Shown: positions 21,440 through 48,044 of the stretch, piece by piece | Position numbering within the stretch: position 1 is the stretch's first letter | Layout of the letters: every line of letters begins with the position of its first letter | Assembly: GCA_002269645.1 (NCBI GenBank) | Contig: NIVC01001048.1 | Location: 104,462-168,461, forward strand | Length of the DNA stretch: 64,000 nucleotides | DNA from: Macrostomum lignano | Taxonomy: Eukaryota | Direction of reading: 5' to 3' | The notes under the pieces: model-generated | What the model saw: the letters and a program-made list of their open reading frames with translations, nothing else | Told to the model about the DNA's origin: nothing | Databases searched by the model: none | Position numbers and translations under genes: made by a program

Positions 21440-21522
21440 CTGTGTTGCGAAATAATCGGATTGAAAAAAGTAAACCTATTATTGCTAGTATTGTTAGTCA
21501 TTTAGGTTAGAAACACAGACAT

Positions 21523-21583
<61 letters not shown>

Positions 21584-21696
21584 AAGATAGGCAGGCAGAC
21601 AAACAGACAGACAGGCAGAAAGACACTAAGACACTAAGACAGACAGACAGACAGACAAATAGATAGACAGACAGACAAACAGACAGACAGATAGAA

Positions 21697-21727
<31 letters not shown>

Positions 21728-21732
21728 TAGAT

Positions 21733-21763
<31 letters not shown>

Positions 21764-21780
21764 TAGACAGACAGATAGAA

Positions 21781-21831
<51 letters not shown>

Positions 21832-22028
21832 TAGACAGACAGACATACAGACAGACAGACCGACAGATAGACAGACATACAGACAGACAGACAGATAGAC
21901 AGACAGACAGAAAGATAGGCAGGCAGACAAACAGACAGACAGGCAGAAAGACACTAAGACACTAAGACAGACAGACAGACAGACAGACAGATAGACAGAA
22001 AGACAGACAAACAGACAGACAGATAGAA

Positions 22029-22081
<53 letters not shown>

Positions 22082-22180
22082 TACAGACAGACAGACCGAC
22101 AGATAGACAGACAGACAGACAGACAGATAGACAGACAGACAGACAGACCGACAGACAGACAGACAGACCGACAGATAGAC

Positions 22181-22255
<75 letters not shown>

Positions 22256-22280
22256 TACTCAGACAGACAGACAGACCGAC

Positions 22281-22312
<32 letters not shown>

Positions 22313-22384
22313 CGACAGATAGACAGACAGATAGACAGACAGACAGACCGACAGATAGACAGACAGACAGACCGACAGATAGAC

Positions 22385-22439
<55 letters not shown>

Positions 22440-22492
22440 TAGACAGACAGACAGACCGACAGACAGACAGACAGACAGACCGACAGATAGAC

Positions 22493-22527
<35 letters not shown>

Positions 22528-22556
22528 TACTCAGACAGACAGACAGACCGACAGAC

Positions 22557-22588
<32 letters not shown>

Positions 22589-22624
22589 CGACAGATAGAC
22601 AGACAGACAGACCGACAGATAGAC

Positions 22625-22660
<36 letters not shown>

Positions 22661-22672
22661 CGACAGATAGAC

Positions 22673-22711
<39 letters not shown>

Positions 22712-22740
22712 TACTCAGACAGACAGACAGACCGACAGAC

Positions 22741-22787
<47 letters not shown>

Positions 22788-22816
22788 TACTCAGACAGAC
22801 AGACAGACCGACAGAC

Positions 22817-22853
<37 letters not shown>

Positions 22854-25800
22854 CTAAAACGGACAGTATCCTCACCAGCCAGAATGCCGTCCTTGGGCAG
22901 CACAAACCGGGTGGCGGGGTCGGAGTCGGGGTCGAAGGTGTCCACATTAAGCGTGTACAGCTGGATCAGGTCGTCAGCTTTGAAATGCCGATCGATCTGA
23001 TGCTCGTCGACCACCCGCTGGCTGAGGGACTGCTTGGTGACCTGCCTGTCGTAGATCTTCTCCTCCATGGTGCCCTGGGCCACCAGGCGATAGACGTACA
23101 CAGGTTTGGTCTGGCCGAACCGGTAGGTGCGGAAAATCGACTGAATATCGTGCGACGGATTCCAGCTGACGTCGAAGATGACCACCCGATTAGCCGCGGG
23201 GAGATTAACGCCTGGGATTAGCAAATTATAGGATGCGACATTATTTTAATTTTAGTATAAAAAAATGCCCCTAATATACTGATTATTGATTAATATGCCC
23301 GCAAATGGGAATCGAACTCAGGACAAGAAAGTTAAGCATGGTTGACAGCGGTTAGTTCGCTAATTTGCTAATCAGTAGGAACTGCGGACACCTGGGGGTT
23401 ACGGACAAAACCAAGGCAATTTCAAAGATCTGTTTTATTTATATAAAGCATAAAAAGTTTGTTCTAATGTTACACCCGAGACAGCAAGCAATCAAGCAAG
23501 GTGATGTGCCAGCGGCCCAGGCTCGATTCCAAGTGCAGTCGCATTAATTTGGAGCTAAACTGGAATCAAACAACCCTCAATGCACAGTTAAGTGTACATG
23601 CCTAACGACAGATAAAGTTAGGGGGCCGCTGTACACTCCTGTGTGAGTGTGTGCCTGTGCGTTTGACTGCGTACGTATCCGCGCGCTTGTGTGCCTGCTC
23701 AGGGGAGTCGGCGAAATGGGCAGCAATGCCTCTCGCCGGTTGTGTGACAATGTCGCTTAAAGTGCGCCAGGGTGCACAGCCCCCTACCTCTAAATGTCGC
23801 TAATGTCTGTCTAAATGACAATCTACCCGCTTCTCTAACTTCTGAGAAGCTTTGAGGTATGACTTTCATGAGTGTGACCCGGAAATCCCACTCACCCAGT
23901 CCGCCAGCCTTGGTGCTGATCAGAAACAGCCGCAGGCGAAGATCGTCCACCCTGTTGAAAGCCTCGGACATAGCCTTGCGAGTCTGTGCGGCAGTGGAGC
24001 CGTCCAGTCTCAGGTAGTCCCTGCCCTGCTCCCACGAGTTGAACCCCAGCTCAGACCGGAACGGGGATCCTTCACCCAGGTCGTGAAATCGGCCAAGAAA
24101 ATGCTCAATAACATTCAGCGACAGCAGAGACTGTGAGAACACCAGCAGTTTGTCTCCAATATCGTTGCACATCTTCATGATGCTGAATAGGATGTACAGC
24201 TTGCCGCTGATGGACACATCATTGGCCATGTCCTCGTTGTAGAGCGAGTGCCACCACTCCTCCTGGGTGGAGGTGGGCGCCGGAGCCTCCGCGTCGCCAG
24301 TGAGGTCGATGGTTGGACTGCCCTGTCGGGTGTGCCGCGTCCGACGTACAACCGGCGCGGAGTCCGACTTATTCTTTGACTCTTTGTTTTGGTCTTTGTC
24401 ATCGTCGGAATTGTCGGAGCTGCTGGAACCGCTGTCTGATTCAGAATCTTCCTCTTCTTCATCATCGATAAAATCGGCTTCCTCTTCTTCGGATTCTTCT
24501 TTAAGCCGGCGGAGCAGCATCTCCTCTTCGTGCAGCTTCAGGGTGTAGGGGTGAGTCCACACTCGGTACAGGACTTGGTTGTCGGCGAATAGCGAGATGC
24601 CGCCCTGCGACAGTCGGGGCCGCACCTGGTCCAGGTAGGTCTGGTAGAGCTTGATCTGGAGGGCAGAGTTTGTGGCCGGTTTAGGGCGATTCTCATTGGC
24701 TGGTGTAAGGGCGATTCTCATTGGCTAGTGTAGGAGCGATTCTCATTGGCTAGTGTAGGAGCGATTCTCATTGGCTGGTGTAGGGGCGATTCTCATTGGC
24801 TGGTGTAGGGGCGATTCTCATTGGCTGGTGTAGGGGCGATTCTCATTGGCTGCTGCAGGGGCGATTCTCATTGGCTGGTGTAGGGGCGATTCTCATTGGA
24901 TGGTGTAAGGGCGATTCTCATTGGCTAGTGTAGGAGCGATTCTCATTGGCTGGTGTAGGGGCGATTCTCATTGGCTGGTGTAGGGGCGATTCTCATTGGC
25001 TGGTGTAGGGGCGATTCTCATTGGCTGCTGCAGGGGCGATTCTCATTGGCTGGTGTAGGGGCGATTCTCATTGGATGGTGTAAGGGCGATTCTCATTGGC
25101 TGGTGTATGGGCGATTCTTGAAGGCGATAAAAAGGCGATTTTTAAAGGCGATAAAAAGGCGATTTTTGAAGATAAAAATGAAGCGATTCTACTCAGCAAC
25201 ACTACCAGAATAAAGCGATTTTAAAAAATGCTCTTAGGTTCCAAAGCTGCAACTTAAAAACAACAAAGATGAACATCCAGCCCTACCTGAACCTCGCTCA
25301 GCCTGACGCTAATGATGTACTCGTACTTCGGCGGCAGGTACTTAGTCAGGGCCGAATAATCTCGCCGATGCACGCAACCGTCCAACATTTTGTGCAGCAC
25401 GTGAGCTCGCCGTTTCATAACCCGAACGTCCAGAGCCGTACTGTCAGCGTGCTGCCCGTTCACAATGGGATTAACAAACCGATTAGCAAACTCCTTAGCT
25501 GTGCCCAGCAGATTCGGTTTGACAAAATTCACCATAGTGTAATATTCGTTGAGATTGTTCTGCAAAGGTGTCCCTGTCAGAACGATGCGCCGTCTAGTTC
25601 GCATCTCGTTCATCACTTTGGCCAAGCCGGTGGAGCCCGACTTCAGGATGTGGCCTTCGTCGCAGACTACTACATCGGGGCCAGGGTCGAGCAGGGCCTG
25701 GGTTGGTGGGGAGGGGGTACAGGTAATTAGGTAGATAATACATGCCATTGAAGATTAGATTACAAATCAATACCTACTAGATAAGCACTGCTTCAAATGA

Positions 25801-28800
25801 AAACAAATAGTAATTTTCTAGATTAGCTAGTATCTTAATCTAATCTCGTCCTATAGATAAGCCACCAGTGTCTTGAATCTAATCTTGTCCTATAGATAAG
25901 CCACCAGTGTCTTGAATCTAATCTCATCCTGTAGTTTATTCAGTGACTTAATCTAATCTCATCCTGTAGATTATTCAGTGACTTAATCCAATCTCATTCT
26001 GTAGATTATTCAGTGACTTAATCTAATCTCATCCTGTAGATTATTTAGTGTCTTAGTCTAATCTCACCCTATATATTAGCCGAGTCTTAACCTAATCTCA
26101 ACCTTTAGATTAGCCGTGTCTTAATCTAATCTCACCCTATAGATTAACCAGTGTCTTAATATAATTTCACCCTATAGATTTGCAGTGATTTAACCTAATC
26201 TCACCCTATAGATTAGCCGTGTCTTAACCTAATTTCGCCCTATAGATTAGCCGTGTCTTAATCTTATCTTACCCTATTGATTAGTTTCATCTGAATCAGA
26301 ATCTCATCTCTAGATTAGCCTTATCTCTCAATGAGAATCTCATCTCTAGATTAGCGCCATCAATCAGAATCTTATTCTTAGAAATTAAAACCAATTTTGA
26401 AGCAATACCTGACGAAAAATTTCGCGATTCTTCTTCTGCCGAATATTCCGTCCCGAGGCCAAGTTTCTAAACATATCGTAGTTGACAATGAGCACCCCGC
26501 CATTGCGCAGGAAGCCTTGACAGTGTGCTAGTCGCATTTTATTATCCTTCACCGTGGCAATCTCTTGCACATCAACAATGTCATCCTCTGACGAGTCCTC
26601 AAGCCACATACGAAATTCGTTACGCCAATTAAGCACCGTATTCAACGGGCAGACAATCAGAGCGGAACGAACTTTCAGCTTATCCGGATACCGAAACAGC
26701 GTGTGCAAGAATGAAATGGTCGACAGAGTCTTGCCAAGCCCCATACAGTGAGCCAGAATACAGCCTGAGCCTTCCGGCTGTCGCTTGAACTGCTCCAGAC
26801 TTTCATAGAGACACTCGTACTGAAACTGCACCGCTTCAACCTGATGCGGCTTTAGTTTGGTGCAAATATTCGGACTGACTTCAATCACTGGCTCGCGTGT
26901 CTCCGGATTCCGTTCCAGCACCAGCTGTTTAGTGATGACAATCTGATTCGGGCCGCTATCATCTAGCACCTCTTGCACAATGTTCTCATTGTATTTCCGT
27001 TGCATTTCAGCGACTCGCCGTCTGCGATCTTTCTCAGCTAGTTCGGCTTCTTTAGTGACGCTGCTGAGTTTATTAACCTTCATAATGCGCTTGATATTGC
27101 GCCGTCCAGTTGCCTTGTCCTCGTCGTCCTCATCTTCTTCTTGGTCGCCGACGTCGGCAATTCGTTCGTCGTCGGAAGTTTTCTTCTTTTTCTTGCCGAT
27201 TTCAACAAAGTCCTCGTCGCTATCCTCTCTGTCGGCCGCTGATTTGTCCGTCTTGCGGCGCTTGCCAAAGCGGCCACCGCCTCCGCCGCCGCCACCGCGA
27301 CTTTTTCGAACTTCGCCATCATCCGAATCGGAATCGTCCAGCAAAACAACTCGCTTTCCTTGCTGTTGCTTCTTTTTATCGCTGTCTTTCTTGGAATTTT
27401 TGCTGTGCTTCTTTTTCCCGGAATCTTCACTGTCGGACATGCGGAAATCCGACACGGCCGAGTTCTCAGAGGCGTCGTCATCCACCGATGCCTCCTTGTC
27501 GTCAGCGTCATCATCACTGGCTTCGTTCGAAAAGTCCGAAGAGTCAAACAGCATGTTGTTTTTGCCTTTCTTCTTTTTCTTTTCGGCCTCTCGTTGCTTT
27601 TTCCTCAGTTTCTGTTGAGACGCGCGAATCTCGTCTTGCAGTCGATCAACCTCATCGTCAGACGAAGTGAACAGGCTCAGCTTCTCAGAGGAGGCGTCAC
27701 TGCCATCGTCGGATGACGCGACTTTACGACGATCGCGTTTGGAACGACGCTTGTCGCCATCGTCGCTGTCTTCAGTCTGCTTGTTCCTCTTGCGCTTCTT
27801 ACTGCGATCCGACTCTTTTAATTCATTCTTATCTCGCTTCTTTTTCTTAGTAGCTTTGTCATCATCATCATAATCTGAGTCGGCTTGCTCATCCGACTGG
27901 GACTTCTTCGATTGGCGCTTCTTTGAACCTCGCTTAGCAGCAGCCGAAACAAAATCATCGTCCGAGTTGTCCTCTTCGTCCAGCTCGTCGTCGCTGTCGC
28001 TAGATTTTGCTGATTTCTTCTTTTTAGTCTGCTGAGCAGCCTTCGATTTCGCTTGTCTCGGCTTGTTGCGCCGCTGTTCATTGGATGAACTGTCGTCATC
28101 TGATCGGTCATCATCCCCGTTAACTTTGCCACGGGTCTTTTTCTGCTGCTCAGGTGAAACTTTCTTCTTCGATTTATCTTTGGCAGTCTTTCGGCTAGGC
28201 CCATCAGACGAGCTATCAGAATCGCTTCCAGCGCTATCACCGCCCTTGCCTTTGTCTTTCTGAACAACGGATGGCTTTGTCTTAGCCAATCTAGGCTTAT
28301 TTCGTCGGCGACTTTCATTGTCTTCGTCGCTGTCATCGGCGCTGCCGACAGTTTCAACTTTTGCCGCAGTACGAGGCCTCAGGCGGCTTGACTCAGAGTT
28401 GGAAACCGCTGTGGAGGAGCTGGCCGGACCAACAGCAGCGCTTGATGTCTTATCAAACACTGGAGAGGCGCACTCGCTGCCGTTAGCAGTTTGCAGAACA
28501 TCGTCAGCCAATTCTGGCTCAGACGGTGTTCGGTCTTCTGCTTCAATTGCAGCTTCTGCTGGCTCAGCATCGGCTAGAGCCTCAGCCTCCGACTCAGAGC
28601 TAATTAGCACAGCAGGCTCAGCTATCTCATCTTCAATATCAGGTTCAGCCCGTTTCGAACTGGAAACTTTAGGCGTCTCTTTCATTCGACGACGCGAAGG
28701 CGGTTTCGACTGCACAGGGGTCTCTTTCTGCCGCTTCTCCTGCTCAGAATTATTTTCCAACTCAACGTCTTCATCTGCATCAGCAAAGTTTGAGCCGCTG

Positions 28801-29402
28801 CCAGTTGGATTAATACCTTCAATCACTTGATCGGCTAGTTCAAGCTCGCGCTCAATATCGCTTAGATGCGGCGACGATCTATCATGATTTAATTCTTCAT
28901 CATCACCAGCTTCTTCAATGTTGTCTTCATCATTATTATTCTCGTTTTCTACATCACTGTCGTCATCAGCACCATTGTGCATCTCTTCTTGATTGTCGTT
29001 ATCTTGATTAGCCTCCTCATCTGTCGTCGGCAGCTCATCCTCGTCCATGCCGTCGATGCTAGATTGACGTTCGGTACGTCGCATTTGCTTTTTCTTTATA
29101 CGACGTTGAAGAAAAACACTTTCCTCTGTTCCACCTGCATCTTCTGGCTTCTGTTCTAATTCTACACTGTCATCAACATTAATATCAGCCTCCATATTTT
29201 CCTCATCATCATCAGCATTACTGTCCAATTCTGATGCGATTTCGTCTTCATCACTGGCGGAAGAATCCGGAGCGGGTCGCTTCATAGAGCATCGACGCAG
29301 GTAGCTGGCGTGCTGAAGAGCCGCTTTAGCGGCCTCACTGTCGGCCTGGCTGATCACAACTGCCGGATAGCAGAAGTCGCTCAGCTTCCAGTCGAAATCC
29401 AT
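20790..29402 (-). CDS. ATRX: ATRX/XNP SNF2-family chromatin remodeller, 5 coding exons (29402-26409, 25697-25287, 24655-23896, 23211-22876, 21439-20790), about 1716 aa
   Basis: Long acidic/Lys-rich N-terminus; [12 protein letters not shown]; [16 protein letters not shown]; [13 protein letters not shown]; [15 protein letters not shown]; [10 protein letters not shown]; KLLVFSQSL; RLDGST; [15 protein letters not shown]; [33 protein letters not shown]; [10 protein letters not shown]; Q-rich tail. Intron phases 0,0,1,1 are consistent and the total of 5151 nt is divisible by 3. The true 5' end is uncertain. Confidence 0.93.
21510..22855. repeat. (GACA)n microsatellite filling the last ATRX intron
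   Basis: Directly visible. It explains the SVCL-repeat ORFs. Confidence 0.98.
22876..23211 (-). CDS. ATRX: ATRX exon (motif VI)
   Basis: Acceptor TCCCAG; [14 protein letters not shown]...LPKDGILA; donor G|GTGAGG. Confidence 0.92.
23896..24655 (-). CDS. ATRX: ATRX exon (acidic insert, helicase C-lobe)
   Basis: Acceptor CTCCAG; IKLYQTYL...ISTKAGGL; donor G|GTGAGT. Confidence 0.92.
24685..25115. repeat. 25-bp minisatellite, about 17 copies (GGCGATTCTCATTGGCTGGTGTAGG), in an ATRX intron
   Basis: Directly visible. Confidence 0.95.
25287..25697 (-). CDS. ATRX: ATRX exon (DEGH motif II, motif III)
   Basis: Acceptor ACCCAG; [16 protein letters not shown]...VRLSEVQ; donor CAG|GTAGGG. Confidence 0.92.
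25840..26380. repeat. Degenerate ~35-bp tandem repeat (TTAATCTAATCTCACCCTATAGATTAGCCGTGTC) in an ATRX intron
   Basis: Directly visible. It shares the TAATCTCACC core with the P450 intron-4 repeat. Confidence 0.85.
26409..29402 (-). CDS. ATRX: ATRX large exon (low-complexity region to helicase motifs I/Ia)
   Basis: ORF 26385-29405; donor CAG|GTATTG at 26408. Confidence 0.92.
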
Positions 29403-30454
29403 CAAGAATTCAAAATTAAATAATGACGACGTAGTAGCAATACAGTTATAACCACGTAAGAATACTAAACCTTACAGGCTCAAACAGATTTTGGAAACAT
29501 AGGGTAACCTGCTGGATTAACTACTAGGTGAAACTACGTACACCCGCTGACTATAAATACGTACCTCCATAGACTAAAATTCACCTATACTAATACACAA
29601 TGTGTTTAATACACGGGGTTTATTTTTATTTCTTAATGATTTCATTTGATTTAGAACATGACAAATTGGCGTGATCACTTTTTAATAATGAGTTGACACA
29701 TGAGTTGACACATCTCGGGACTTTAGGATGTGTGATCACGAACATTTTCTTTAATCGATTATGTTGTATTAATATAGCCTGTCCAGGATTGCTATGGGAG
29801 GTTGGACCATAGACAACGCAACTAAGCCACCACTAGCAAATGTTTTTAAATCCAATCGTGTCTTGAACTGAGGAACAGAAAAAAAGAGAACACAAATAAC
29901 TACTAAATCGTAAATGAAAGGAGAAAAAAGCTAAGAAGATTCAATGTGTATTGATTTTTTGGAAATTCTAATCTTTGTTAAAAAGGCTACAGCAAAAAAG
30001 TTAAAAAAACAAACAACAAATAATAGTAGAGGTTATGCACTGTATAAAATGTTGCAGTCTGAAAGCAATTTAATTAAACAGTGGGAAAGGCTACGCTTGA
30101 AGACAGACCTTTGTATTGAAAGTTCTATTGTAGTCTATTGTAAGTATAATAATCAGAGCGTTTTGTGTCATTAGTAATAAATAGCGTTTTGCATTACTGG
30201 TAATATTATTATAATAACGGTTTAAAAACCATCTGCATTCAACATGTAACTTGTAAGAATTCAATGGTAGGGCACTTTAACTGGCAGTCACAATCGAATA
30301 TTTTCATATCGATTATTTCAGTTAGTAAAATCTGGAGAACCATCAGTTAGAGATATCAGTAGAACCTAAAGACAAAAAAAGTAAATTAGTGGGATATCAG
30401 TAGAACTTATTAACTAAGAATCTTGGAGGGTGCTCAGTATACACTGTGAATCTG

Positions 30455-30810
30455 GGTGTCAGCAGAACCTAAGGATCTTGGAGTATGTCAGCAGAACCTG
30501 AGGATCTTGGCAGTATGTCAGTAGAACCTGAGGATCTGGGAGGGTGTCAGTAGAACCTGAGGATCTGGGAGGGTGTCAGTAGAACCTGAGGATCTGGGAG
30601 GGTGTCAGTAGAACCTGAGGATCTGGGTGTCAGTAGAACCTGAGAATCTGAGAGGGTGTCAGTAGAATCTGAGAATCTGGGAGGTTGTCAGTAGAATCTG
30701 AGGATTAGGGAGGTTGTCAGTAGAATCTGAGAATCTGGGAGGGTGTCAGTAGAATCTGAGAATCTGGGAGGTTGTCAGTAGAACCTGAGGATCTGGGAGG
30801 TTGCCAGTAA
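30455..30810. repeat. 29-bp minisatellite (GAACCTGAGGATCTGGGAGGGTGTCAGTA), about 12 copies
   Basis: Directly visible. Confidence 0.92.
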
Positions 30811-31267
30811 AAAAGTTTAAATTTTTAGCAGAATCGAGTAACCTTGGGTTAAACGATGTACGGTAAAATTAGCTTTAAAGAACTTCAAATTCCAGGATAT
30901 CTTAAAAGATAAGTACACAATCATAAAAAGCGATCTAATAAACGAGTTTACAGTAAGCTTTAAAACATGGTAAAAATATAAACAAGCACCAAGACTTTAC
31001 TTTAAAAAATTAAAAGCTATTTTAAAAAACTTGTTTGAAATAACTTTAGGATTTGTTTGGCATTGAAAATCGCCCCCCTACACGATTGGCGCAGTTCGCA
31101 AATAAAAATACCTTGAACACATCTTTGTGGCAAAGTAGAATAGTAAAATATTCAAATGTTTAATTGCAATAATCCTGCTTCTGAAGCTAAACATCTCAAA
31201 AATGGTCCAGTCATCAGTTTCTATTTTCTATCAAACTTGTAAAAGTATAAGGAGCACGGAAAATTAA

Positions 31268-32284
31268 TTATTGGAAATTTATCAAAAAATCGCGGATTTT
31301 TTTATATGATAAAAAAACAAACTGTGATATATACACGTTGTTGTCTGTAGCAAAACAGGAATCAAATAAGGCATACTGATCCGTTTTACTATCACGCATA
31401 ACACAAACTGCATGTTCAGAATTATATATACCACAAATGAAACCGCAGACTTTATTAAAATCTATTTCCAGTAAATCGAGTTGTGTAATCGATTGAACTT
31501 CATCATAACGCAGGTAAAAATCTGGCCATAAAGTGCGGCCATGGTGAAAAATCGTGTTACTAAGATGAGATAATTTTAGCAAACTATTTTCTGGCAATTT
31601 TTCTTGAGATAGGCAATACTTATAAATACGTTCACCTAACTTTAAAACAAAATCAACATCTTCTTTGAATTTAAAGAAATCTAAACTTCCACCGAATCTG
31701 TAATGCAATAAAGCAGCAGCGGCAGACACTGCTAAGCACATTGGTTGACCCATTATTGCATTAGAAGATATAGTTTTCTCTATGAAATTGTTTGCTTCGA
31801 TAACATACTTTGGAACAATGAGCCTTCGAAATTCAGGGTGATCAAGCTCATGTATAAATAATTCGTCGAGACTTTCAAGCAATTTTGCATACTTGTCGGA
31901 TGCTGAAGACGGACGTGTTGCATCAATTTTTGCTTTGACGAGCTGGGAAAACTTAACAAGGGCATCAAACAAGCTTTCGGCAGACACTGCTAAGCACATT
32001 GGTTGACCCATTATTGCATTAGAAGATATAGTTTTCTCTATGAAATTGTTTGCTTCGATAACATACTTTGGAACAATGAGCCTTCGAAATTCAGGGTGAT
32101 CAAGCTCATGTATAAATACTTCGTAGAGACTTCTAAGCCATTCCGCATACTTTTCGGATTCTGGAAACGGACGTGTTGCATCAATTTTTGCTTTGATGAG
32201 GCAGGCCAACTTAAAACAAGCATAAAAAAAGCTTCCGTTGTTCAAAGAAATTTCATTTTCAATCTGGCCGGTATTGTCTGACAT
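31268..32284 (-). CDS. Hypothetical protein with an internal 86-aa duplication and a divergent herpes-tegument (peptidase C76)-like domain; catalytic His replaced by Cys (FDSC)
   Basis: Stop-free AT-rich ORF (open from 32368; likely ATG at 32284, MSDNTGQ). 258-bp direct duplication. The C-terminal half aligns by eye with the neighbouring gene: MCLAVSAAAALLH vs QCMAMSMAFIRLH; DVDFVLKLGERIYKYCLSQEKLPENSLL vs ILDVVLNIGHQLYETCIKANRLPNNQHL; HAVCVMRD..YALFDSC vs RAVAVTRD..LFLFDSH. Confidence 0.7.
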   Translation of the reverse strand: MSDNTGQIENEISLNNGSFFYACFKLACLIKAKIDATRPFPESEKYAEWLRSLYEVFIHELDHPEFRRLIVPKYVIEANNFIEKTISSNAIMGQPMCLAVSAESLFDALVKFSQLVKAKIDATRPSSASDKYAKLLESLDELFIHELDHPEFRRLIVPKYVIEANNFIEKTISSNAIMGQPMCLAVSAAAALLHYRFGGSLDFFKFKEDVDFVLKLGERIYKYCLSQEKLPENSLLKLSHLSNTIFHHGRTLWPDFYLRYDEVQSITQLDLLEIDFNKVCGFICGIYNSEHAVCVMRDSKTDQYALFDSCFATDNNVYISQFVFLSYKKIRDFLINFQ

Positions 32285-32404
32285 GATTGTAACATGCAAA
32301 AATATAGGAGAATAGTTAGCTACAAAGTACAAAAACAGCGAGAATATTGTATGAATACATCTGTCCAAGCAACGGCACTGAGTGAAGGAGGTTGTCCTAA
32401 CTTG

Positions 32405-33868
32405 AGGGTATGGGAGGTTGTCAGAACCAGGGGGTATGGGAGGTTGTCAGAACCAGGGGGTATGGGAGGTTGTCAGAACCGGAGGGTATGGGAGGTTGTC
32501 AGAACCGGAGGGTATTGGAGGCATTGGAGGTTGTATATGGTTCATAATAAAACTTCAAAAAAGAATTTCATTGCGAGTGCTTGGAATCAATAACGATTTT
32601 TTATCCCAACCATACTTTGAAAGGGTGATAAAAATTAAAGATCTGAGAGGGTTTCACTAGAACCTGGGAATCTGAGAGGGTGTCCCTGAGAGGGTGTCGC
32701 TAGAACCTGCGGATCTGAGAGGGTGTCCCTAGAACATGGGGATCTGAGAGGGTTCGCTAGAACCTGCGGATCTGAGAGGGTGTCCCTAGAACATGGGGAT
32801 CTGAGAGGGTGTCCCTAGAACCTGGGGATCTGAGAGGGTGTCCCTAGAACCTGCGGATCTGAGAGGGTGTCCCTAGAACCTGGGATCTGAGAGGGTGTCC
32901 CTAGAACCTGGGATCTGAGAGGGTGTCCCTAGAACCTGGGATCTGAGAGGGTGTCCCTAGAACCTGGGGATCTGAGAGGGTGTCACTAGAACCTGGGATC
33001 TGAGAGGGTGTCCCTAGAACCTGGGATCTGAGAGGGTGTCCTAGAACCTGGGATCTGAGAGGGTGTCCCTAGAACCTGGGGATCTGAGAGGGTGTCCTAG
33101 AACCTGGGATCTGAGAGGGTGTCCCTAGAACCTGGGGATCTGAGAGGGTGTCACTGGAACCTGGGAATCTGAGAGGGTGTCCCTAGAACCCTGGGATCTG
33201 AGAGGGTGTCCCTAGAATCCTGGGATCTGAGAGGGTGTCCCTAGAACCCGGGGATCTGAGAGGGTGTCCCTAGAACCCTGGGATCTGAGAGGGTGTCCCT
33301 AGAACCCGAGGATCTGAGAGGGTGTCCCTAGAACCCGGGGATCTGAGAGGGTGTCCCTAGAACCCGGGGATCTGAGAGGGTGTCCCTAGAACCCGGGGAT
33401 CTGAGAGGGTGTCCCTAGAACCCTGGGATCTGAGAGGGTGTCCCTAGAACCCTGGGATCTGAGAGGGTGTCCCTAGAACCCTGGGATCTGAGAGGGTGTC
33501 CCTAGAACCCTGGGATCTGAGAGGGTGTCCCTAGAACCCTGGGATCTGAGAGGGTGTCCCTAGAACCCTGGGATCTGAGAGGGTGTCCCTAGAACCCTGG
33601 GATCTGAGAGGGTGTCCCTAGAACCCTGGGATCTGAGAGGGTGTCCCTAGAACCCTGGGATCTGAGAGGGTGTCCCTAGAACCCGGGGATCTGAGAGGGT
33701 GTCACTAGAACCCGGGGATCTGAGAGGGTGTCCCTAGAACCCGGGGATCTGAGAGGGTGTCACTAGAACCCGGGGATCTGAGAGGGTGTCACTAGAACCC
33801 GGGGATCTGAGAGGGTGTCCCTAGAACCCGGGGATCTGAGAGGGTGTCCCTAGAACCCGGGGATCTGT
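32405..33868. repeat. 28-29-bp minisatellite (GAACCCGGGGATCTGAGAGGGTGTCCCTA; main array 32640-33868, about 42 copies, plus a related block at 32405-32530)
   Basis: Directly visible. Same family as 30455-30810. Confidence 0.95.
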
Positions 33869-34752
33869 GATCCGTCAATTGAGCCTGAAATTTACTTGTA
33901 AGGCCTGTAGTAAGCCTTGACAATATCCGAAACATCCAAAGTAGAAACGTATAAACCGAAGATAAAGAAAAATGGTGGCATTTTAAAACAGTTTTGCTTT
34001 TATTTTGTATGATGATAATAGAATAATAATAGTATGATAATATGAAATAATAAATAGCACTGATTAAAATTGTTTTTTTGAAAAGTCACAATGATGTCAG
34101 ATGTACAAAGTGAAAGTTATACAAAATGACATATGGGAATTACATTACGAGCTACATAAAAAATCCCACATTCTCACATTCTTTGACATTCTATACTTAA
34201 ATAACTGTTAAACGTTACCAAAAAAATTGTGAACAAAACTGAGTTGTGAACGATAGGAGCAGGTTAAAAATATTTCAGAGGAAATATTGCATGAAATTTG
34301 AAAAAAATAAATATATATAAAAGCAACAAGCAAATAATACATATTTATTACTTGTAGAAATGATGTAAAATGTAAATAATGATTCAAATTGCACCACAAA
34401 AAAACAAAACCGAGATGTGAACGACTAAGCTGAACGAACGAGAAGTAAAATATTTCACAGGGGAGATAGCATGAAATTTTCATTTAAAAAATTTAGGACA
34501 GGAAAATATGCGCATATATGAATACATTATGGAGAGTATTTTACAATAGTTACTTTCAAAAAGCCAAAAATTTTTTAAACCAATTACGAGCTAGTTTAAT
34601 TTTAATAGTAAATAATTTTTAATTTAATTTTGAAAAAAGCTTGATTTAATTCAAATAGAAAAATTATGACAAACAAAATATTTTTGTCTCTATAATATTC
34701 CTTTAATTTGAACCATCAGCCATTTAATATCATCCCAGATTTATTTGTATTT

Positions 34753-37700
34753 TCATTCGTCGCATTTATAAAAGTGCATTTCACATGGCCAGCCGTTTTG
34801 AAACATAACACACAGGTTCATAACCAGTTCGGCAATACTGGAGCATCTGAGAGCGTAGGCTGGATTGCTAGTGCTCGAATCGCCAGTAGCCTCAATTTGA
34901 TTATCAAGCAATGATGCAGCACCATCAAAAGAAGCTGGAAACTGATCGGAGCCATGCGAATCAAACAGAAACAGTTGACTGGAATCTACCCGATCTCGGG
35001 TCACAGCCACAGCTCTGCCGTGCATGATCAACAAGAAGCCATCGTAGCCGTTGGCAAATCCCCACTGTACACTCCTACCCGAGTCAATCCAGTTATGAGG
35101 ATTTGACTCGCCAACTACGGGATCAAATCTTGGCCAGCCTCCGTGTCGATCGAATGCCAGCATCCCATTCTGCAGCTCGTCAAAATTTAAATGTTGATTA
35201 TTTGGCAGCCTATTGGCTTTGATGCAAGTTTCATACAGTTGATGGCCAATATTCAAGACGACATCGAGAATAGATTTCGATAGCGAGCCGCTAAACGATC
35301 CCAGTAGCATATGATGCAGCCGGATAAAAGCCATAGACATTGCCATGCACTGCATTCCGGCCGCAGCGCCAAATAATGAGAAATCTGACTGGTTTCTGCT
35401 AGCCAATAGGGCTGCGCGTTGGACATAGCCTGTGAAATTTATCGTTGCCTTCTTAATTAATATTTCCTATGCTAGTCTCACACAGGTACGTTTCTATAGT
35501 TTGTGCGAGCAACTGCATTACTCTGCATGTCCTAAACTTGACCACTCCTAAACTTGACTACTCCTAAACTTGACTACTCCTAAACTTGACTACTCCTAAA
35601 CTTGACTACTCATAAACTTGACTACTCCTAAACTTGACTACTCATAAACTTGACTACTCATAAACTTGACTACTTCTAAACTTGACTACTCCTAAACTTG
35701 ACCACTCATAAACTTGACCACTCCTAAACTTGACTACTCCTAAACTTGACTACTTCTAAACTTGACTACTCCTAAACTTGACCACTCCTAAACTTGACAA
35801 ACCCTAAACTTAACCACTCCTAAACTTGACCACTCCTAAACTTGACTACTCCTAAACTTGACCACGCCTAAACTTACTACTTCTAAACTTGACTACTCCT
35901 AAACTTGACTACTTCTAAACTTGACTACTCCTAAACTTGACCACTCCTAAACTTGACCACTCCTAAACTTGACTACTCCTAAACTTGACTACTCATAAAC
36001 TTGACTACTCATAAACTTGACTACTCATAAACTTGACCACTCCTAAACTTGACCACTCCTAAACTTGACTACTCCTAAACTTGACCACTCCTAAACTTGA
36101 CCACTCCTAAACTTGACTACTCCTAAACTTGACTACTCATAAACTTGACCACGCCTAAACTTGACTACTTCTAAACTTGACTACTCATAAACTTGACCAC
36201 GCCTAAACTTGACTACTTCTAAACTTGACTACTCCTAAACGTGACTACTCCTAAGCTTGACTACTCCTAAACTTGACTACTCCTAAACTTGACTACTCCT
36301 AAACTTGACTACTCCTAAACTTGACTACTTCTAAACTTGACTACTCCTAAACTTGACTACTCCTAAACTTGACTACTCCTAAACTTGACCACTCCTAAAC
36401 TTGACTACTCCTAAACTTGACTACTCATAAACTTGACTACTCCTAAACTTGACTACTCATAAACTTGACCACTCCTAAACTTGACTACTCATAAACTTGA
36501 CCACTCCTAAACTTGACTACTCCTAAACTTGACCACTCCTAAACTTGACCACTCCTAAACTTGACCACTCCTAAACTTGACCACTCCTAAACTTGACTAC
36601 TCCTAAACTTGACTACTCATAAACTTGACCACGCCTAAACTTGACTACTTCTAAACTTGACTACTCCTAAACTTGACCACGCCTAAACTTGACTACTTCT
36701 AAACTTGACTACTCCTAAACGTGACTACTCCTAAACTTGACTACTCCTAAACTTGACTACTCCTAAACTTGACTACTCCTAAACTTGACTACTCCTAAAC
36801 TTGACTACTCCTAAACTTGACTACTCCTAAACTTGACTACTCCTAAACTTGACTACTCCTAAACTTGACCACTCCTAAAAAATTGACCACTCCTAAAAAC
36901 TTGACTACTTCTAAACTTGACCACTCCTAAAAACTTGACTACTCCTAAACTTGACCACTCCTAAAAAATTGACCACTCCTAAAAACTTGACTACTCCTAA
37001 ACTTGACCACTCTTAAACTTGACTCTCCTAAACTTGACTCCTAAACACTTGGCAACTTTTTGAGGGTTTCACTCAATCACTAAATTTCACATTATGAAAA
37101 TTTTAGCAACTTACCTGGCTCAGCCTCTTCCTGACTAATTTGTGTTTGAAACTGAACACGAGGCCACCCGGGATTAGCAAACTGGCACGCGTCAGGCAGA
37201 ATTTCTGGCGGAAGACTGACAACGCGAGAGTGCGCTAGAGCCCTGCTAACAGCGTCAGTGGTCATCTTCAACAACAGGCCATTGTAGGCACTATCTTCTC
37301 TACTCCGTAGATAACAATGAAAATCCATCAGAAACTGCATCCGTGTCCAAACAAACGGTCCCGAATTCCAACGCACCTGGAACAGCGGATCTCTATTCGA
37401 ACTAATACTAGCCCGATTGACCAATTGACTGCTCCAAGCTGCACTGGGAGTGGACAAGAAATCAAGCAGACAGTCGCGAGCAAACTGATGAAATTGGTGC
37501 GAGCACTGGCACGGATCAACTAGCTTCATCAGTTGCACAACAGTATTGCTTGGATTCTCAAGAATTTTACAAATCAGCTTGCAAACTTGCGACTTTGAAA
37601 CGTTAGAAATGGTAATTGATTCTCTCTCATTGTCATTAACCAACTCCATAGAGAAGCGACCAGCTGGCTGGCCAGGGTCATCTGTAACCAGGACAGCAGC

Positions 37701-38010
37701 GGTCGGAGGGTACATCATTGTACACAGCGTAGACATTAGGCTTTCAACACACTCCGGAAGAGCAAGACAGCCCAGTCTATTAAGATCCGCCTCTGAATAA
37801 TGTGGCCGCTGTCTTATGCTTCGGAGGACATAGACCTAAAATTTTTTAGCAATGCAGAAAAATAATGCAAGTTATCATTGCCTCAATTCTTTATTAGAAT
37901 TAACTCCCTCAACTCACATTAATAATTTGTGCAGAAGTAATTAGAAAATACAAATGATGGATGCCACCAAAAGAATTCTCTGCAACATTGTTATCATTTT
38001 CTTCATCCAT
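34753..38010 (-). CDS. 3-exon gene (38010-37918, 37835-37115, 35429-34753), 496 aa: unknown N-terminal domain + C-terminal herpesvirus-tegument-type (peptidase C76-like) deubiquitinase domain
   Basis: AAACA-ATG start; donors AAT|GTGAGT and G|GTAAGT; acceptors TTTTTAG and TTCACAG; phases 0 and 1 match; 1491 nt = 497 codons with no internal stop. Motifs SRNQSDF...AGMQCMAMS (Gln and catalytic Cys) and GFLLIMHGRAVAV...LFLFDSH (Asp/His) match my recollection of the UL36/BPLF1-type DUB signature. Confidence 0.78.
35530..37045. repeat. 16-bp minisatellite, about 94 copies (TAAACTTGACTACTCC), filling intron 2 of the DUB-like gene
   Basis: Directly visible. Confidence 0.97.
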
Positions 38011-38343
38011 TGTTTAATTGTTGCTATTGCTAATTTTTGTAGTCAAGTAGCAATAACTGTAGGGCTTGTGGCATGAATTGGTAATTGTATAAAAATGAGA
38101 TTAAATTATATAAAATTTTATATAATTCATTACAAAATTATTTTTAAAGATTTTACTTTAATATTGTTTACTTACAATAGAATAAGTCAAGCAAAATTAC
38201 TATAGTCTAATCATTTATGCCTGTAAAAAAAGATTATTGATAAAGTGATACCTTAAAAATGTAATAAAAACCTAGTTTTGCATAGAAAGATTGATATGCA
38301 TAATAACTTTCTAACAAAACTCAAAGCACTAAATATTTAGATT

Positions 38344-38607
38344 CAGGGGCGTAGCGAGGGGGGTATTGGTATATCGGCCGATACCCCCAAATTTCCAAAG
38401 CAACATTTTTTTCCTTTTTTCAGTTGCAATTGTGACCGTTATGGAAGAGAAAGGTATCCAAATCGAAAGAATAACAATTAACAAACAAATAGAGTATTTA
38501 TATGTATTATGCACTAGAAATACATTAAGGGGATATGTGGATCTCAAGCCCTTGCTTTCTGATAACAGCTAACCGATACCTCAAAAAAAATCCTGGCTAT
38601 GCCCCTG
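38344..38607. mobile_element. hAT-family MITE, 264 bp
   Basis: 8-bp TSD TTTAGATT (38336-38343 and 38608-38615). TIRs CAGGGGCGTAGC and CAGGGGCATAGC (reverse complement). The right end TCCTGGCTATGCCCCTG is nearly identical to that of the 10421-14250 element. Confidence 0.93.
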
Positions 38608-39009
38608 TTTAGATTAGGCCCTAATAGCAAAGTCCTAATTAATAATAAGACAAAATGAAATAATGAAAAATTAAATATAAAATTTAAAATAATATAAAGC
38701 TAGTTGCAATATTTAACAACTTGCTTTACAATGCCAGCATACTAAAACAATATTTTAAATCATTTAAAAAACGAAAATAATATTTATAAATTGTATTTTT
38801 CAGGTTGATATTTATTTTTTTACGTAATACCTGTTGGAAAAGTTATGCACTTGTGTAGGCATAAAATGTGAGCAAGGTGCACAAAAGAGGCACTTTAGTG
38901 GCCTATTTTTTCATGTTTTTTTAGCTAGTTAAAAGGACATTCCAGAGTCAGTTAGATTTATCTCAACAAGATAGAGCACCAGCACACTAATTAAGGGTTG
39001 CATAGGAAT

Positions 39010-39270
39010 GGCTGGAGCAGAACATTAACTTGCAAAGTTGCACTAGCCGCCATTGTTGCCAGATCTATTGCTGCTTGAATCTAGTGTGAAGGCACACATT
39101 AAGAGCAAGGCCTATTCTGTCTGCCATAGCAACATTGAGTCATCAAAGGCTGCTATGATAGAAGAGTGGAATGCTGTGTCACTAGCCTATATCCGCAACA
39201 CTTGCAGAACTTTCCAAAGATGCCTTCAGAGAGCCATTGAAGCTTGAGGTAGCTACTTTGAGTAATATTA
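39010..39270 (+). mobile_element. Tc1/mariner-superfamily transposase relic (C-terminal fragment)
   Basis: Translates as PP..PDL...HSNIESSKAAMIEEWNAVSLAYIRNTCRTFQRCLQRAIEA*GSYFE*, the typical Tc1-like C-terminus (WPPxSPDL...LKxAIxxEW...RLxAVIxAxGGYFE). Degenerate, with stops. Confidence 0.65.
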
Positions 39271-39518
39271 ACTACTGCAAGTCATGAACACATGCAAAAG
39301 GTTTTAGTAGCCAAAAATATATAATTTGAATAATAATACTTTTTATGTTGCTTCTAATTTACTGAAAATACTATTGCAATACCCAGACTTTATTAAAGAT
39401 CCTAATGATTTGCCAATATGTATATAGAAAGTAAATTTTAGTAAAAAAAGGTTATTTGCAAATGAATAGCTTTATAATGCAGTGAAATAAAATAAAAGCA
39501 AACAAGTATTAAAAAGAA

Positions 39519-41392
39519 TCTTTCTTCTAATCCTCACATAATACTAAAAGTGGTGCGTTGTTTGTTTGTTTGTATGTTGTAAGTGAACTCCTACAATTCT
39601 GCCAAGTCAGCGTCGAAACTTATATGGGAAAACTGCAAATTTTCCGGATCAGGCTTTAGGCTATTTTAATTTTTAATTTTCACATTTTAACATCCCTAAA
39701 AAAGCAGAAAACTGCTTTTTTAACCCCCAATAACCTTCTTTGGCCACTCTGCCTGGGGCTGCAGCCAGTTTGTAAAAATAGCCACCCCAACCTCCGCCCG
39801 CGGGCCGCTGTGTATTGAGGGGTGGTGGGTGCGCGTGTTCTGGGTTCAATGCAAATAAAACCCCCCGCGTGTTGGGGGGCTGAGTTAAATTTAATGCTTT
39901 ACCCAGAACGGGGGTTGGGCTTGGGCTGAGTGTACATAGCAGTTGTACAGTGTGAATAGATAGACTGTGTCGAGATTCAATTGGTTTTATTATTGGCGCC
40001 TTTTTTCCATAGGCAGCCCTGTGTATTAGTTTGGCGTGAAATTCAATGAATAAACTTGCGAACTTCTCTAGCAACTTAGCAAGCAGTCGGGAAATTGGTG
40101 AATTTCAAACGCTAACTGTTCCTCGAGTTTTAAACTTTGAGAGGAGAGACTTATATTGCTAGAAAGATCTTGCAACGCTGAGTTCGGGGATATAAGTTGT
40201 TTGCTTTAAATATGAAAAGAAAAAGCACAGCATTTAAAAAACTATTTCCATACTTTTAACTTTCTGCAAAAATTGTACTCAGTTTTGCGAGACGTAATAG
40301 ATAAAGTTGGGCGTATTGGAAGGGTGTCTGCCGCTGCATATTGGAGGGTTGATTTAGATTGCGCAACCGTTTATTTAACTTTAAATAAGACTGATACTGT
40401 CTGACTGAGAAATGGTTTGCGCAATTAATTGATTCAATTGATTCAACACGCAGCTCTGTGCAGCTCTAACCCTAACCCTAACCAATGAATTCTGAGAGTT
40501 AAGTTCTTTTTGACAGAAAATTTCGATTGAGTCCAGTTTCACGGAGTATTCTGATGGTTTTCGGTTTCACGGAGAGGATTTCTTTTTCGTGGAGAGAATT
40601 TAGATGTATTTCTGTTTTACGGAGACGATTTTGATGGATGTCAGTTTCACTCAGAGGATTTCCATGGAGCCCAGTTTCACGGAGAGGATTTCTGTTTCGC
40701 GGAGAGGATTTCTGTTTCGCGGAGAGGATTTCTGTTTCACGGAGGGATTTTGATGGATTTGGTATCTTCAGTCAGTCAGTAAAGAGAGTAAAGAGAAGAG
40801 TGAAAAGAGAAGAGAGAAGAGATTATAGAAAAGAGAGTAGAGATGAGAGAGGACAGATTAGACATGACAGATGGGAGAGAAGAGGGGAGTAAGGCGGGAA
40901 CGAAGAGGGAGAGAGAAGAAAAGAGGAGAGAGGAGATGAGAGGGAAGATATGAGATAGCAGAGGGAGACAGGAGAGATGAGAGGGGAGAGAAGAGAGGAG
41001 CTGAGAGTAGAGGAGAAAGAAATAGTGAGATGAGGCATGAGGGATGAGAGATGAGAGAGGAGAGAAGAGAGGAGAAAACAGGGGATAAAGGAGACAGGAG
41101 AGAAAGCCGAAAGACGAGGGAGAAGAGATAAATAAGGTGGTAGAGATGAGAGACGTGAGAGGAGAGAGAAGAGAAGAGAGGAGACAGAAGAATCTGAGTC
41201 TGGACAATGGCAGTCAGTTTTTGCGAACAGGGAAAACAAGATATGGTATTTGAAAGGCTTTACAGAGGATTTGGAGATGATTTGGAAGATGGGATTCAAG
41301 TCAGCTGGAATTTCAGCTGATGGATTTCAGGGAATGGAATTCCGGTGATGGGAGTTCTTCCCCTTTCTCCTCCGAAGGAGGAGTTCCACTCG
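39519..41392 (+). mobile_element. Putative non-autonomous Helitron, unit 0 (divergent member)
   Basis: Starts A|TC...ATAATACTAAAAG followed by a (TTTG)n microsatellite. Shares the GATTTAGATTGCG...GATACTG.CTGACTGAGAAAT block with units 1-3. Ends with hairpin CTCCTCC-GAA-GGAGGAG (41367-41383) and CTCG instead of CTAG. Confidence 0.5.
40770..41200. repeat. AG-rich low-complexity tract
   Basis: Directly visible; produces the Leu/Ser-rich minus-strand ORFs. Confidence 0.9.
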
Positions 41393-41984
41393 TATATACT
41401 AAAAATGAAAATCTTGCTTGCTTGCTTGCTTGTAATCGATTAGAGAAAAAATGGCTTAACCGATTTTCATGAGACTTGCACTGTTCGATCAGAAATTTTC
41501 CCGTGACGGTACATGTGTCTTGGCTAAGAAATTGCTCGATGCTAAAGGCATTAAATACTCGCAAAGGTCAAGCAAACTTTTCGACTTGAAATGCATTGTA
41601 AGAATGCTAGAAAAAAATTGACTGGTTGAATTCTGATTCTAAAATAGATTGCATCATAACTGAATTGTGACTCCGACTTGAATTGCGTCACAGTATTGAA
41701 AATGCAGTGTGGAAGCGAAACACCAGACGTGATTTAGATTGCGTAACCATATTGTTAACTGATACTGACTGACTGAGAAATTGATTATGTCATAACTGCC
41801 TCGTGTGATTTACTCTATGCTTGGAGTTTTGAAACTTATAATTATAAGTGCTAAAATTCATATTATCAAAACGATGAGAGCTAGCCTAGAGGTAAACAGA
41901 CTGACTGCTAAATGCAGGGACGATGGTTCGAATTTTTAGAGAGTGGAATTTTTTTAATTAAAGCTTTTTAACACCAAAAAGAAA

Positions 41985-44217: not shown

Positions 44218-44256
44218 TTAGGGTTAGGTTAGGGTTAGGGTTAGGGTTAGGGTTAG
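44218..44256 (+). repeat. Interstitial telomeric repeat (TTAGGG)n, about 6 copies
   Basis: Directly visible inside Helitron unit 1. Confidence 0.95.
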
Positions 44257-48040: not shown

Positions 48041-48044
48041 ACTT

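What the first reader, a model, noticed from the sequence alone, without database searches (positions are those of the whole stretch)
31268..32368. Adjacent paralogue looks like a catalytically altered pseudo-DUB (FDSH to FDSC): a possible enzyme/pseudo-enzyme pair
Seen in sequence: 2.4 kb downstream and in the same orientation, a long stop-free AT-rich ORF aligns by eye with the DUB domain of the previous gene across three blocks. It keeps the Cys-helix (PMCLAVS) but lacks the upstream Gln context and has Cys where the catalytic His should be. The two are very divergent, yet the frame is intact, which suggests selection. Inference: a ubiquitin-binding decoy or regulator paired with an active DUB, possibly a small lineage-specific immune/regulatory cluster.
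Basis: partly seen in the sequence, partly recalled or inferred. Interest (0 to 1): 0.7.

Follow-up and report, generated by a model that had tools for sequence, protein, structure and literature searches.

The report
Catalytically dead flatworm C76 protease paralogue
This is a real but orphan flatworm gene, a very diverged copy of a herpesvirus-tegument-type (C76) cysteine protease domain that has lost two of its four catalytic residues, and it looks like a leftover of a small, decaying tandem gene family, not a dedicated enzyme/decoy pair.

Summary
The window is Macrostomum lignano (Mlig_3_7, contig NIVC01001048.1).

**Observation holds.** ORF "B" (31268..32368, minus strand) is a true paralogue of the C76-like domain of the upstream gene "A". 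BLASTP gives E=6e-11; hhalign gives 96.8% probability. B keeps the catalytic Cys and Asp. It has Cys (TGT) where the His sits and Ile where the oxyanion Gln sits. By sequence it is a dead protease.

- An in-frame 258-bp tandem duplication doubles the Cys box.
- B has no detectable homologue outside this species.
- In the paralogous subgenome locus (contig NIVC01000137.1) the flanks are 88-96% identical. The same slot, bounded by the same minisatellite, holds a third, unalignable paralogue "C". C has Gln, Cys, Asp and His all intact.

So A+B is not a conserved enzyme/pseudo-enzyme pair. The best reading is an A-B-C array that lost B or C reciprocally after the recent genome duplication.

The annotated CDSs of B and C both start at an AG acceptor in the phase of A's exon 2. 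They may therefore be alternative 3' exons of A, or trans-spliced units.

Structure prediction was uninformative. Ubiquitin binding and any immune role are untested. Interest is modest.

The parts
31268..32368 (-). ORF B (the finding), 366 codons stop to stop. The annotated 5'-partial CDS is 31268..32278 (P0001, 336 aa, starts DNTGQ).
31271..31813 (-). C76-like (herpesvirus tegument USP-like) domain of B, about aa 186-366. Cys211 is at 31738..31736, Asp336 at 31363..31361, Cys338 (His position) at 31357..31355, and Ile200 (oxyanion Gln position) at 31771..31769.
31721..32236 (-). In-frame 258-bp tandem duplication (copy 1 31979..32236 = aa 45-130; copy 2 31721..31978 = aa 131-216). The 3' 140 nt are identical. 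The 5' 118 nt differ in 20 codons (18 non-synonymous, 2 synonymous). It duplicates the Cys box; the second Cys copy is at 31996..31994.
32277..32284 (-). In-frame genomic ATG (32284..32282) followed by TCAG|AC. The AG at 32279..32278 is a candidate splice or trans-splice acceptor. The annotated CDS starts at its G, in the same phase as exon 3 of gene A.
32387..33867 (.). Upstream boundary of the slot: 29-bp minisatellite array (32686..33867, 41 units) plus 26-bp and 43-bp variants (32387..32730). It is collinear with L002 14207..14943.
30454..30809 (.). Downstream boundary of the slot: the same 29-bp minisatellite family in direct orientation (12 units). L002 keeps one unit at 16235..16266.
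30212..30316 (-). Short unique segment shared with L002 16291..16397 (88-90% identity), just beyond the downstream satellite. It shows that B and C occupy the same slot.
34753..38010 (-). Gene A (PAA72996.1, BOX15_Mlig028667g1, 496 aa; UniRef name 'Peptidase C76 domain-containing protein'). Exons are 38010..37918, 37835..37115 and 35429..34753. Exon 3 is the C76 domain: Gln at 35391..35389, Cys at 35349..35347, Asp at 34962..34960, His at 34956..34954. Intron 2 holds a 16-bp satellite (35530..37039).

Best explanation
B is a lineage-specific, very diverged paralogue of the papain-like C76 cysteine isopeptidase domain, the fold of the herpesvirus large-tegument deubiquitinase.

It belongs to a small Macrostomum lignano family with three deep paralogues (A, B, C). 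They lie in tandem upstream of an ATRX-like SNF2 gene and are separated by arrays of one 29-bp minisatellite.

After the recent genome duplication (dS about 0.05 between A and A'), recombination between the minisatellite arrays most likely removed C from this copy and B from the other. The two subgenome loci now read A-B and A'-C.

B keeps the fold-defining core and the nucleophile Cys and Asp. It has lost the general-base His (now Cys) and the oxyanion-hole Gln (now Ile), has a 3-residue deletion before the Cys, a short C-terminus, and an 86-aa in-frame tandem duplication.

B therefore cannot work as a canonical Cys-His protease. It is most likely a redundant family member under relaxed constraint. 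At most it is a non-catalytic binding module, not an obligate partner of A.

**Shown:** homology, residue states, the duplication, slot equivalence, and absence of other relatives.

**Inferred:** loss of activity, the reciprocal-loss history, and relaxed constraint.
For: - **Homology of B to A and C:**
- **A is C76-like by Pfam, above the cut-off:**. Its Gln-Cys spacing matches the solved cytomegalovirus enzyme in the alignment printed.
- **Residue states in B:**
- **Family definition (Cys, His, Asp and Gln strictly conserved):** PMC8123002.
- **Paralogous locus with the same gene order but C in the slot:**
- **Flanks versus slot:** flanks are 88-96% identical and the slot has no nucleotide similarity. 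There is no remnant of C here or of B there.
- **Same satellite family and shared fragment on both sides of the slot:**
- **Divergence of A and A':** dS=0.049, dN/dS=0.42. B-C divergence therefore long predates the locus duplication.
- **Large indels are the main difference between M. lignano subgenomes:** PMC10733133.
- **Duplicated units in B:** 18 non-synonymous against 2 synonymous differing codons.
- **Composition:** GC3 is 0.31 in B and 0.36 in C, against 0.45 in A and 0.50 in the ATRX exon.
- **No homologues elsewhere:**
Against: - A 366-codon open frame in 36% GC DNA is far beyond chance. It has stayed open over a divergence of about 70% from A and C, so B was under coding constraint for most of its history.
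- The GenBank gene set is built from RNA-seq transcripts and excludes non-coding and repeat-overlapping models (PMC5730564). B is therefore probably transcribed.
- 22 core columns are invariant across A, A', B and C.
- The reciprocal-loss order is inferred from two loci without an outgroup.
- An alternative His (for example His320, also present in A) cannot be excluded, because the structure model was poor.
Confidence: 0.6

Rival explanations
1. B (and C in the other subgenome) is not a separate gene. It is an alternative 3'-terminal exon of gene A. The common 271-aa N-terminal part (exons 1-2) would be spliced either to exon 3 (domain A) or, further downstream, to the B exon. This would give isoforms with different C76-type modules, one of them inactive.
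For: - The annotated CDSs of B and C are both 5'-partial and start exactly at the G of an AG.
- A's exon 2 ends in phase 1 with a G. Joining exons 1-2 to the B exon gives an open 607-codon frame, and A' exons 1-2 to the C exon an open 584-codon frame. The junction codon is Asp in both, as in the annotated products.
- C has no in-frame ATG anywhere upstream of its catalytic Cys, so it needs an upstream coding exon or non-AUG initiation.
- UniProt entry A0A1I8H3Y3 (P0004) already joins exon 2 to a different acceptor.
Against: - The transcript-based annotation keeps them as separate genes.
- The phase match of both has a chance probability of about 1/9.
- B has its own in-frame ATG 5 nt upstream of the AG.
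- A has AATAAA 10 nt after its stop, conserved in A'.
- The spliced leader of this species also ends in G (PMC8629364). A start at the G fits trans-splicing equally well.
- No junction reads could be examined.
Confidence: 0.25
2. One reading: B is a selected pseudo-deubiquitinase. It would be a ubiquitin- or Ubl-binding decoy or regulator that works together with the active enzyme A as a functional pair.
For: - Intact long ORF and probable transcription.
- Conserved structural core with Cys and Asp kept.
- Same strand as A and adjacent to it.
Against: - The A-B pairing is absent from the paralogous locus. There A' sits beside the intact C, and B is missing without trace.
- No orthologues, so no evidence of purifying selection.
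- The recent in-frame duplication inserts a second, truncated Cys box and shows mostly non-synonymous differences.
- Nothing bears on ubiquitin binding.
Confidence: 0.15
3. B is a fragment of a mobile element or endogenous virus, for example the Herpes_teg_N-type domain carried by some Helentron (HLE2) transposases. It would not be a host gene.
For: - Herpes_teg_N domains occur in the RepHel ORFs of HLE2 elements (PMC11417382).
- B and C are AT-rich relative to their neighbours.
- The slot content differs completely between the two subgenome copies.
Against: - No Rep, helicase or endonuclease domain was found in the ORFs tested in and just upstream of the cluster (window 29944..41564). None was found among the other large ORFs tested either, where the only helicase-type hits belong to the ATRX-like SNF2 gene.
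- No other copies of B were found in the window, L002 or the protein collections.
- The GenBank gene set excludes models overlapping annotated repeats.
- The slot is bounded by minisatellites, not terminal repeats.
Confidence: 0.07

Closest known systems
Peptidase family C76 (Pfam PF04843 Herpes_teg_N): the N-terminal deubiquitinase/deneddylase domain of herpesvirus large tegument proteins (HSV-1 UL36USP, MCMV M48USP, EBV BPLF1)
   Same: - Gene A matches the Pfam model above its cut-off.
- A, A' and C have Gln, Cys and Asp-x-His with the spacing seen in the solved viral enzyme.
- B is homologous to them over the whole Cys-to-Asp core.
   Different: - These are cellular flatworm genes, not viral ones.
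- The domain is C-terminal, not N-terminal.
- B itself has no Pfam hit and lacks the His and the oxyanion Gln.
- The fold was not confirmed by structure search.
Herpes_teg_N-type domains fused to RepHel transposases of Helitron-like elements, group HLE2 (HELIANO study, PMC11417382)
   Same: This is another occurrence of the C76-type domain in eukaryotic genomes outside herpesviruses.
   Different: No Rep or helicase domain was found in the ORFs tested around the cluster (window 29944..41564). The genes are low-copy and annotated as host genes.
Pseudo-deubiquitinases of other families (inactive USP, OTU or JAMM paralogues that act as scaffolds or regulators; my own knowledge, not tested here)
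   Same: A protease fold is retained while catalytic residues are lost, next to active paralogues.
   Different: For B there is no evidence of conservation, of binding, or of a partner. It is an orphan with a recent internal duplication.

Membership tests
Peptidase C76 / Herpes_teg_N | Significant match to the family profile (Pfam PF04843, cut-off 25 bits) | tested here: not met
   B has no hit even at E<=10. A scores 40.9-44.2 bits. B is linked only transitively through A (E=6e-11; hhalign 96.8%).
Peptidase C76 / Herpes_teg_N | Catalytic Cys at the start of the central helix | tested here: met
   Cys211 lies in an invariant column with the Cys of A, A' and C.
Peptidase C76 / Herpes_teg_N | Catalytic His two residues after the Asp (Asp-x-His) | tested here: not met
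   B reads FDSC where A, A' and C read FDSH. The codon is TGT against CAT/CAC.
Peptidase C76 / Herpes_teg_N | Catalytic Asp | tested here: met
   Asp336 is invariant.
Peptidase C76 / Herpes_teg_N | Oxyanion-hole Gln about 13-14 residues before the Cys | tested here: not met
   The column holds Ile200 in B and Gln in A, A' and C. There is also a 3-residue deletion before the Cys.
Peptidase C76 / Herpes_teg_N | Papain-like fold resembling the solved viral enzyme | tested here: inconclusive
   The AlphaFold2 models had mean pLDDT 52 (B) and 64 (A). Foldseek found no significant matches in PDB or BFVD.
Peptidase C76 / Herpes_teg_N | Ubiquitin/NEDD8 isopeptidase activity | not testable with these tools
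   This needs enzyme assays.
Functional pseudo-enzyme (selected inactive paralogue) | Purifying selection on the inactive copy across orthologues | tested here: inconclusive
   No orthologue or near-copy exists to compare. The internal duplicate shows 18 non-synonymous against 2 synonymous differences. The long open frame argues for past constraint.
Helitron-like element (HLE2) carrying Herpes_teg_N | Linked Rep and helicase domains, and multiple copies | tested here: not met
   No such domain was found in the ORFs tested around the cluster, window 29944..41564. The SNF2/Helicase_C hits elsewhere in the window belong to the ATRX-like gene. No further copies were found.

The most novel reading that the evidence does not exclude
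One M. lignano gene carries a common N-terminal region and a set of alternative, minisatellite-separated 3'-terminal exons. Each exon encodes a different, deeply diverged C76-type module (A, B here; A', C in the other subgenome), and one of them is catalytically dead. The minisatellites would act as recombination substrates that add or delete modules. This would be a cassette-like system for diversifying a cellular homologue of the herpesvirus tegument deubiquitinase.
Probability: 0.15. Interest if true: 0.65.

Novelty: new variant of a known kind. Interest (0 to 1): 0.35.

Why it matters
Cellular relatives of the herpesvirus tegument deubiquitinase are barely studied. Here a flatworm has at least three deeply diverged copies at one locus. 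Two have a complete catalytic set and one lacks the His and the oxyanion Gln.

This gives a natural active/inactive series for asking what the C76 fold does outside viruses.

The locus is also a clear example of how minisatellite-bounded genes are lost reciprocally between the young subgenomes of M. lignano.

The immediate practical point is negative. The apparent enzyme/pseudo-enzyme pair is not a conserved unit, so it should not be read as a dedicated regulatory or immune module without expression and binding data.

Tried and rejected
- **Homologue searches for B gave only B itself:** word-indexed search and full phmmer against 1.84 billion representatives.
- **Homologue search for the A domain ORF found nothing**. 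The index did not even return A's own product.
- **Profile search with the A/A'/B/C alignment returned only B and C**.
- **PDB sequence searches.** A gives only marginal hits to two cytomegalovirus large tegument deubiquitinase (UL36-family) proteins (E 0.07-0.5). B and the two-sequence profile give nothing meaningful.
- **AlphaFold2.** B (aa 131-366) with a 4-sequence alignment reached pLDDT 52 and pTM 0.55. The A domain reached pLDDT 64 and pTM 0.68. Foldseek against PDB and BFVD found nothing at E<=0.001. The residue opposite the Cys could therefore not be located in three dimensions.
- **N-terminal regions** of A, B and C show no similarity to each other.
- **Remnants.** A search for C in the window and for B in L002 found none. 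The 'A_up' rows of that call used a wrong frame and are ignored.
- **Expression data.** Searches of the literature and supplements for the locus tags found nothing.
- **Rejected: extreme divergence of homeologues.** B and C cannot be homeologues that diverged in place, because the flanks and A/A' differ by only about 5% at synonymous sites.
- **Rejected: sequencing error at the His codon.** The change needs two base differences.

Full report
**Source and setting**

The product of the ORF is on record only on contig NIVC01001048.1 of assembly GCA_002269645.1. That assembly is the Mlig_3_7 genome of the free-living flatworm Macrostomum lignano.

The window is typical of that genome. Genes are multi-exon and their introns and spacers are packed with minisatellites.

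On the minus strand the order is:
- a three-exon gene I call A (38010..34753);
- the finding, ORF B (32368..31268);
- an ATRX-like SNF2 helicase gene (from about 29400 downwards).

**The observation**

B is a 366-codon open frame in DNA of 36% G+C. The other five frames of the same stretch hold 15-36 stops, and the chance of such a frame staying open is about 5e-12.

The ORF upstream (34753..35406) matches Pfam Herpes_teg_N (PF04843, peptidase C76) at E=2.2e-11, 44 bits against a cut-off of 25. B has no Pfam match of its own.

B aligns to that ORF as follows:
- 31% identity over 135 residues, E=6e-11;
- Z=16 against shuffled sequences;
- a profile of its relatives gives hhalign probability 96.8%, E=2.4e-10.

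Both the four-sequence alignment and the hhalign alignment show the catalytic Cys column conserved (Cys211) and the Arg-Asp and Phe-Asp-Ser motifs conserved. Cys338 of B sits in the column where all the others have His.

The codon is TGT against CAT and CAC, so two substitutions separate them. The oxyanion-hole Gln, 14 residues before the Cys in A and C, is Ile200 in B. B also lacks three residues just before the Cys.

A review of viral deubiquitinases states that the Cys-His-Asp triad and the oxyanion Gln are strictly conserved in this family (PMC8123002). The alignment of A to the solved cytomegalovirus enzyme places A's Gln and Cys on that enzyme's equivalent residues.

B contains an in-frame tandem duplication of 258 bp (aa 45-130 and 131-216). 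It repeats a helical N-terminal segment and the Cys box, so GQPMCLAVSA occurs twice. Only the second copy is continuous with the rest of the domain.

The 3' 140 nt of the two units are identical. The 5' 118 nt differ in 20 codons, 18 of them non-synonymous. That pattern fits relaxed constraint with recent homogenisation of the 3' part. It is not evidence for purifying selection.

B has no detectable relative outside this species. A full phmmer scan of 1.84 billion representative proteins returned only B itself. The two word-indexed searches returned only B and, with a profile, paralogue C.

**The neighbour gene**

With canonical GT-AG sites, only one exon combination gives the 496-residue product on record. 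An exact look-up confirmed it as PAA72996.1 (BOX15_Mlig028667g1), which UniRef names 'Peptidase C76 domain-containing protein'.

Its 90% cluster contains a second M. lignano protein, PAA89825.1, on contig NIVC01000137.1. Fetching that locus (L002) showed the same gene order: A', a 313-residue gene, then the SNF2 gene.

**The key result**

The second gene of L002 is not a copy of B. It is a third C76-like paralogue, C (BOX15_Mlig012572g1). It is 29% identical to B (E=2e-8) and 26% identical to A (E=1e-5). Its Gln, Cys, Asp and His are all in place.

At the DNA level the two loci are collinear in two stretches:
- 88-96% identity from window 39490 to 32640;
- about 96% identity from 29553 downwards.

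Between these stretches there is no nucleotide similarity at all.

The slot is bounded in the same way in both loci:
- upstream, by the same 29-bp minisatellite array;
- downstream, by the same satellite family, with 12 units here and one unit at L002 16235..16266;
- beyond that, by a shared unique fragment (window 30316..30221 = L002 16291..16386).

There is no remnant of C in the window and none of B in L002.

A and A' differ by dS=0.049 and dN/dS=0.42. The loci therefore separated recently, in line with the young polyploidy of this species. Its subgenomes differ by about 2% in substitutions but heavily in indels (PMC10733133).

B and C must therefore be old paralogues. The simplest history is an ancestral array satellite-B-satellite-C-satellite. 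Recombination between the direct satellite arrays would then have deleted C in one copy and B in the other.

The A+B 'pair' is thus one of two surviving combinations, not a conserved unit.

**Gene structure**

The annotated products of B and C are both 5'-partial. Both begin with Asp, encoded from the G of an AG dinucleotide.

A's exon 2 ends with one extra base, a G. Joining exons 1-2 to the sequence after the AG gives uninterrupted frames of 607 codons (with B) and 584 codons (A' with C).

C has no in-frame ATG before its catalytic Cys. B has one ATG 5 nt upstream of the AG, and that ATG would be removed if the acceptor were used.

The spliced leader of this species also ends in G, but its AUG is out of frame in both cases (PMC8629364).

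So either B and C are alternative terminal exons of A/A', or they are trans-spliced units with unclear start codons. UniProt entry A0A1I8H3Y3 already joins exon 2 to another acceptor inside exon 3. I cannot decide between these without junction reads, and I give the alternative-exon model about 0.25.

**Expression and mobile-element status**

The GenBank gene set of this assembly derives from RNA-seq-based transcripts. Non-coding models and models overlapping annotated repeats were removed (PMC5730564). B is therefore probably transcribed and is not a recognised repeat.

Herpes_teg_N domains are known in Helentron-type transposases (PMC11417382). However, none of the ORFs I tested in and just upstream of the cluster (window 29944..41564) has a Rep, helicase or endonuclease domain. 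I also found no further copies. The only helicase-type hits in the window belong to the ATRX-like SNF2 gene.

**Structure**

With only four sequences, AlphaFold2 gave weak models: pLDDT 52 for B and 64 for the A domain. Foldseek found nothing significant in PDB or BFVD.

The secondary-structure order is compatible with a papain-like fold: a helical lobe beginning at the Cys, then a beta lobe ending at Asp-x-His. This is not a test. An alternative His, for example His320, cannot be excluded.

**Verdict**

B is a real, probably transcribed, catalytically disabled member of a small flatworm family of C76-type domains.

The claim that it works as a decoy paired with A rests only on adjacency. The paralogous locus undermines that claim.

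I rate it as a new variant of a known kind, of modest interest. The more interesting open possibility is a cassette-like set of alternative C76 modules separated by recombinogenic minisatellites.

Noticed in passing
window 35167..35123 (-), inside exon 3 of gene A: UniProt A0A1I8H3Y3 (286 aa) equals A's exons 1-2 followed by EWDAGIRSTRRLAKI. That ending is encoded in another frame inside exon 3. It is an alternative-acceptor model that would give a protein without the C76 domain.
   Followed up: partly
window about 20790..29553 (-): An ATRX-like SNF2 helicase gene (SNF2-rel_dom, Helicase_C; long acidic/Lys-rich exon 26385..29405). Its introns are filled with minisatellites, including an 8-bp ACAGACAG array at 21515..22853. 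It is 95.7% identical to its copy in L002.
   Followed up: partly
window 11410..13622 (+): A run of overlapping ORFs in different frames. One matches DUF4371 (E=3e-16), as in hAT/ZMYM1-type transposase-derived genes. It looks like a frame-shifted, decaying element.
   Followed up: partly
window 1392..1985 (-) and 60333..61088 (-): An exon-like ORF with a fibrinogen C-terminal domain (E=4.5e-14), and an ORF with weak C-type lectin and PAN domain hits.
   Followed up: no
whole window, e.g. 270..1098, 7719..10020, 16182..18353, 35530..37039, 41987..43634, 49182..50209: Minisatellite arrays (periods 16-88 bp, up to 2.3 kb) are very dense. Related 29-31-bp units (…GAACCTGAGGATCTGGGA…) recur at 14250..14843, 30454..30809 and 32686..33867.
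   Followed up: partly
window 39490 / L002 8815: Collinearity between the two paralogous loci stops here. L002 1..8815 has no long match to window 39490..48500, which suggests another large indel between the subgenomes.
   Followed up: no
window 56000..60000: A G+C-rich block (53-55%) with several 140-310-aa ORFs on both strands. The two ORFs tested have no Pfam hit. It may be a decayed retroelement.
   Followed up: no
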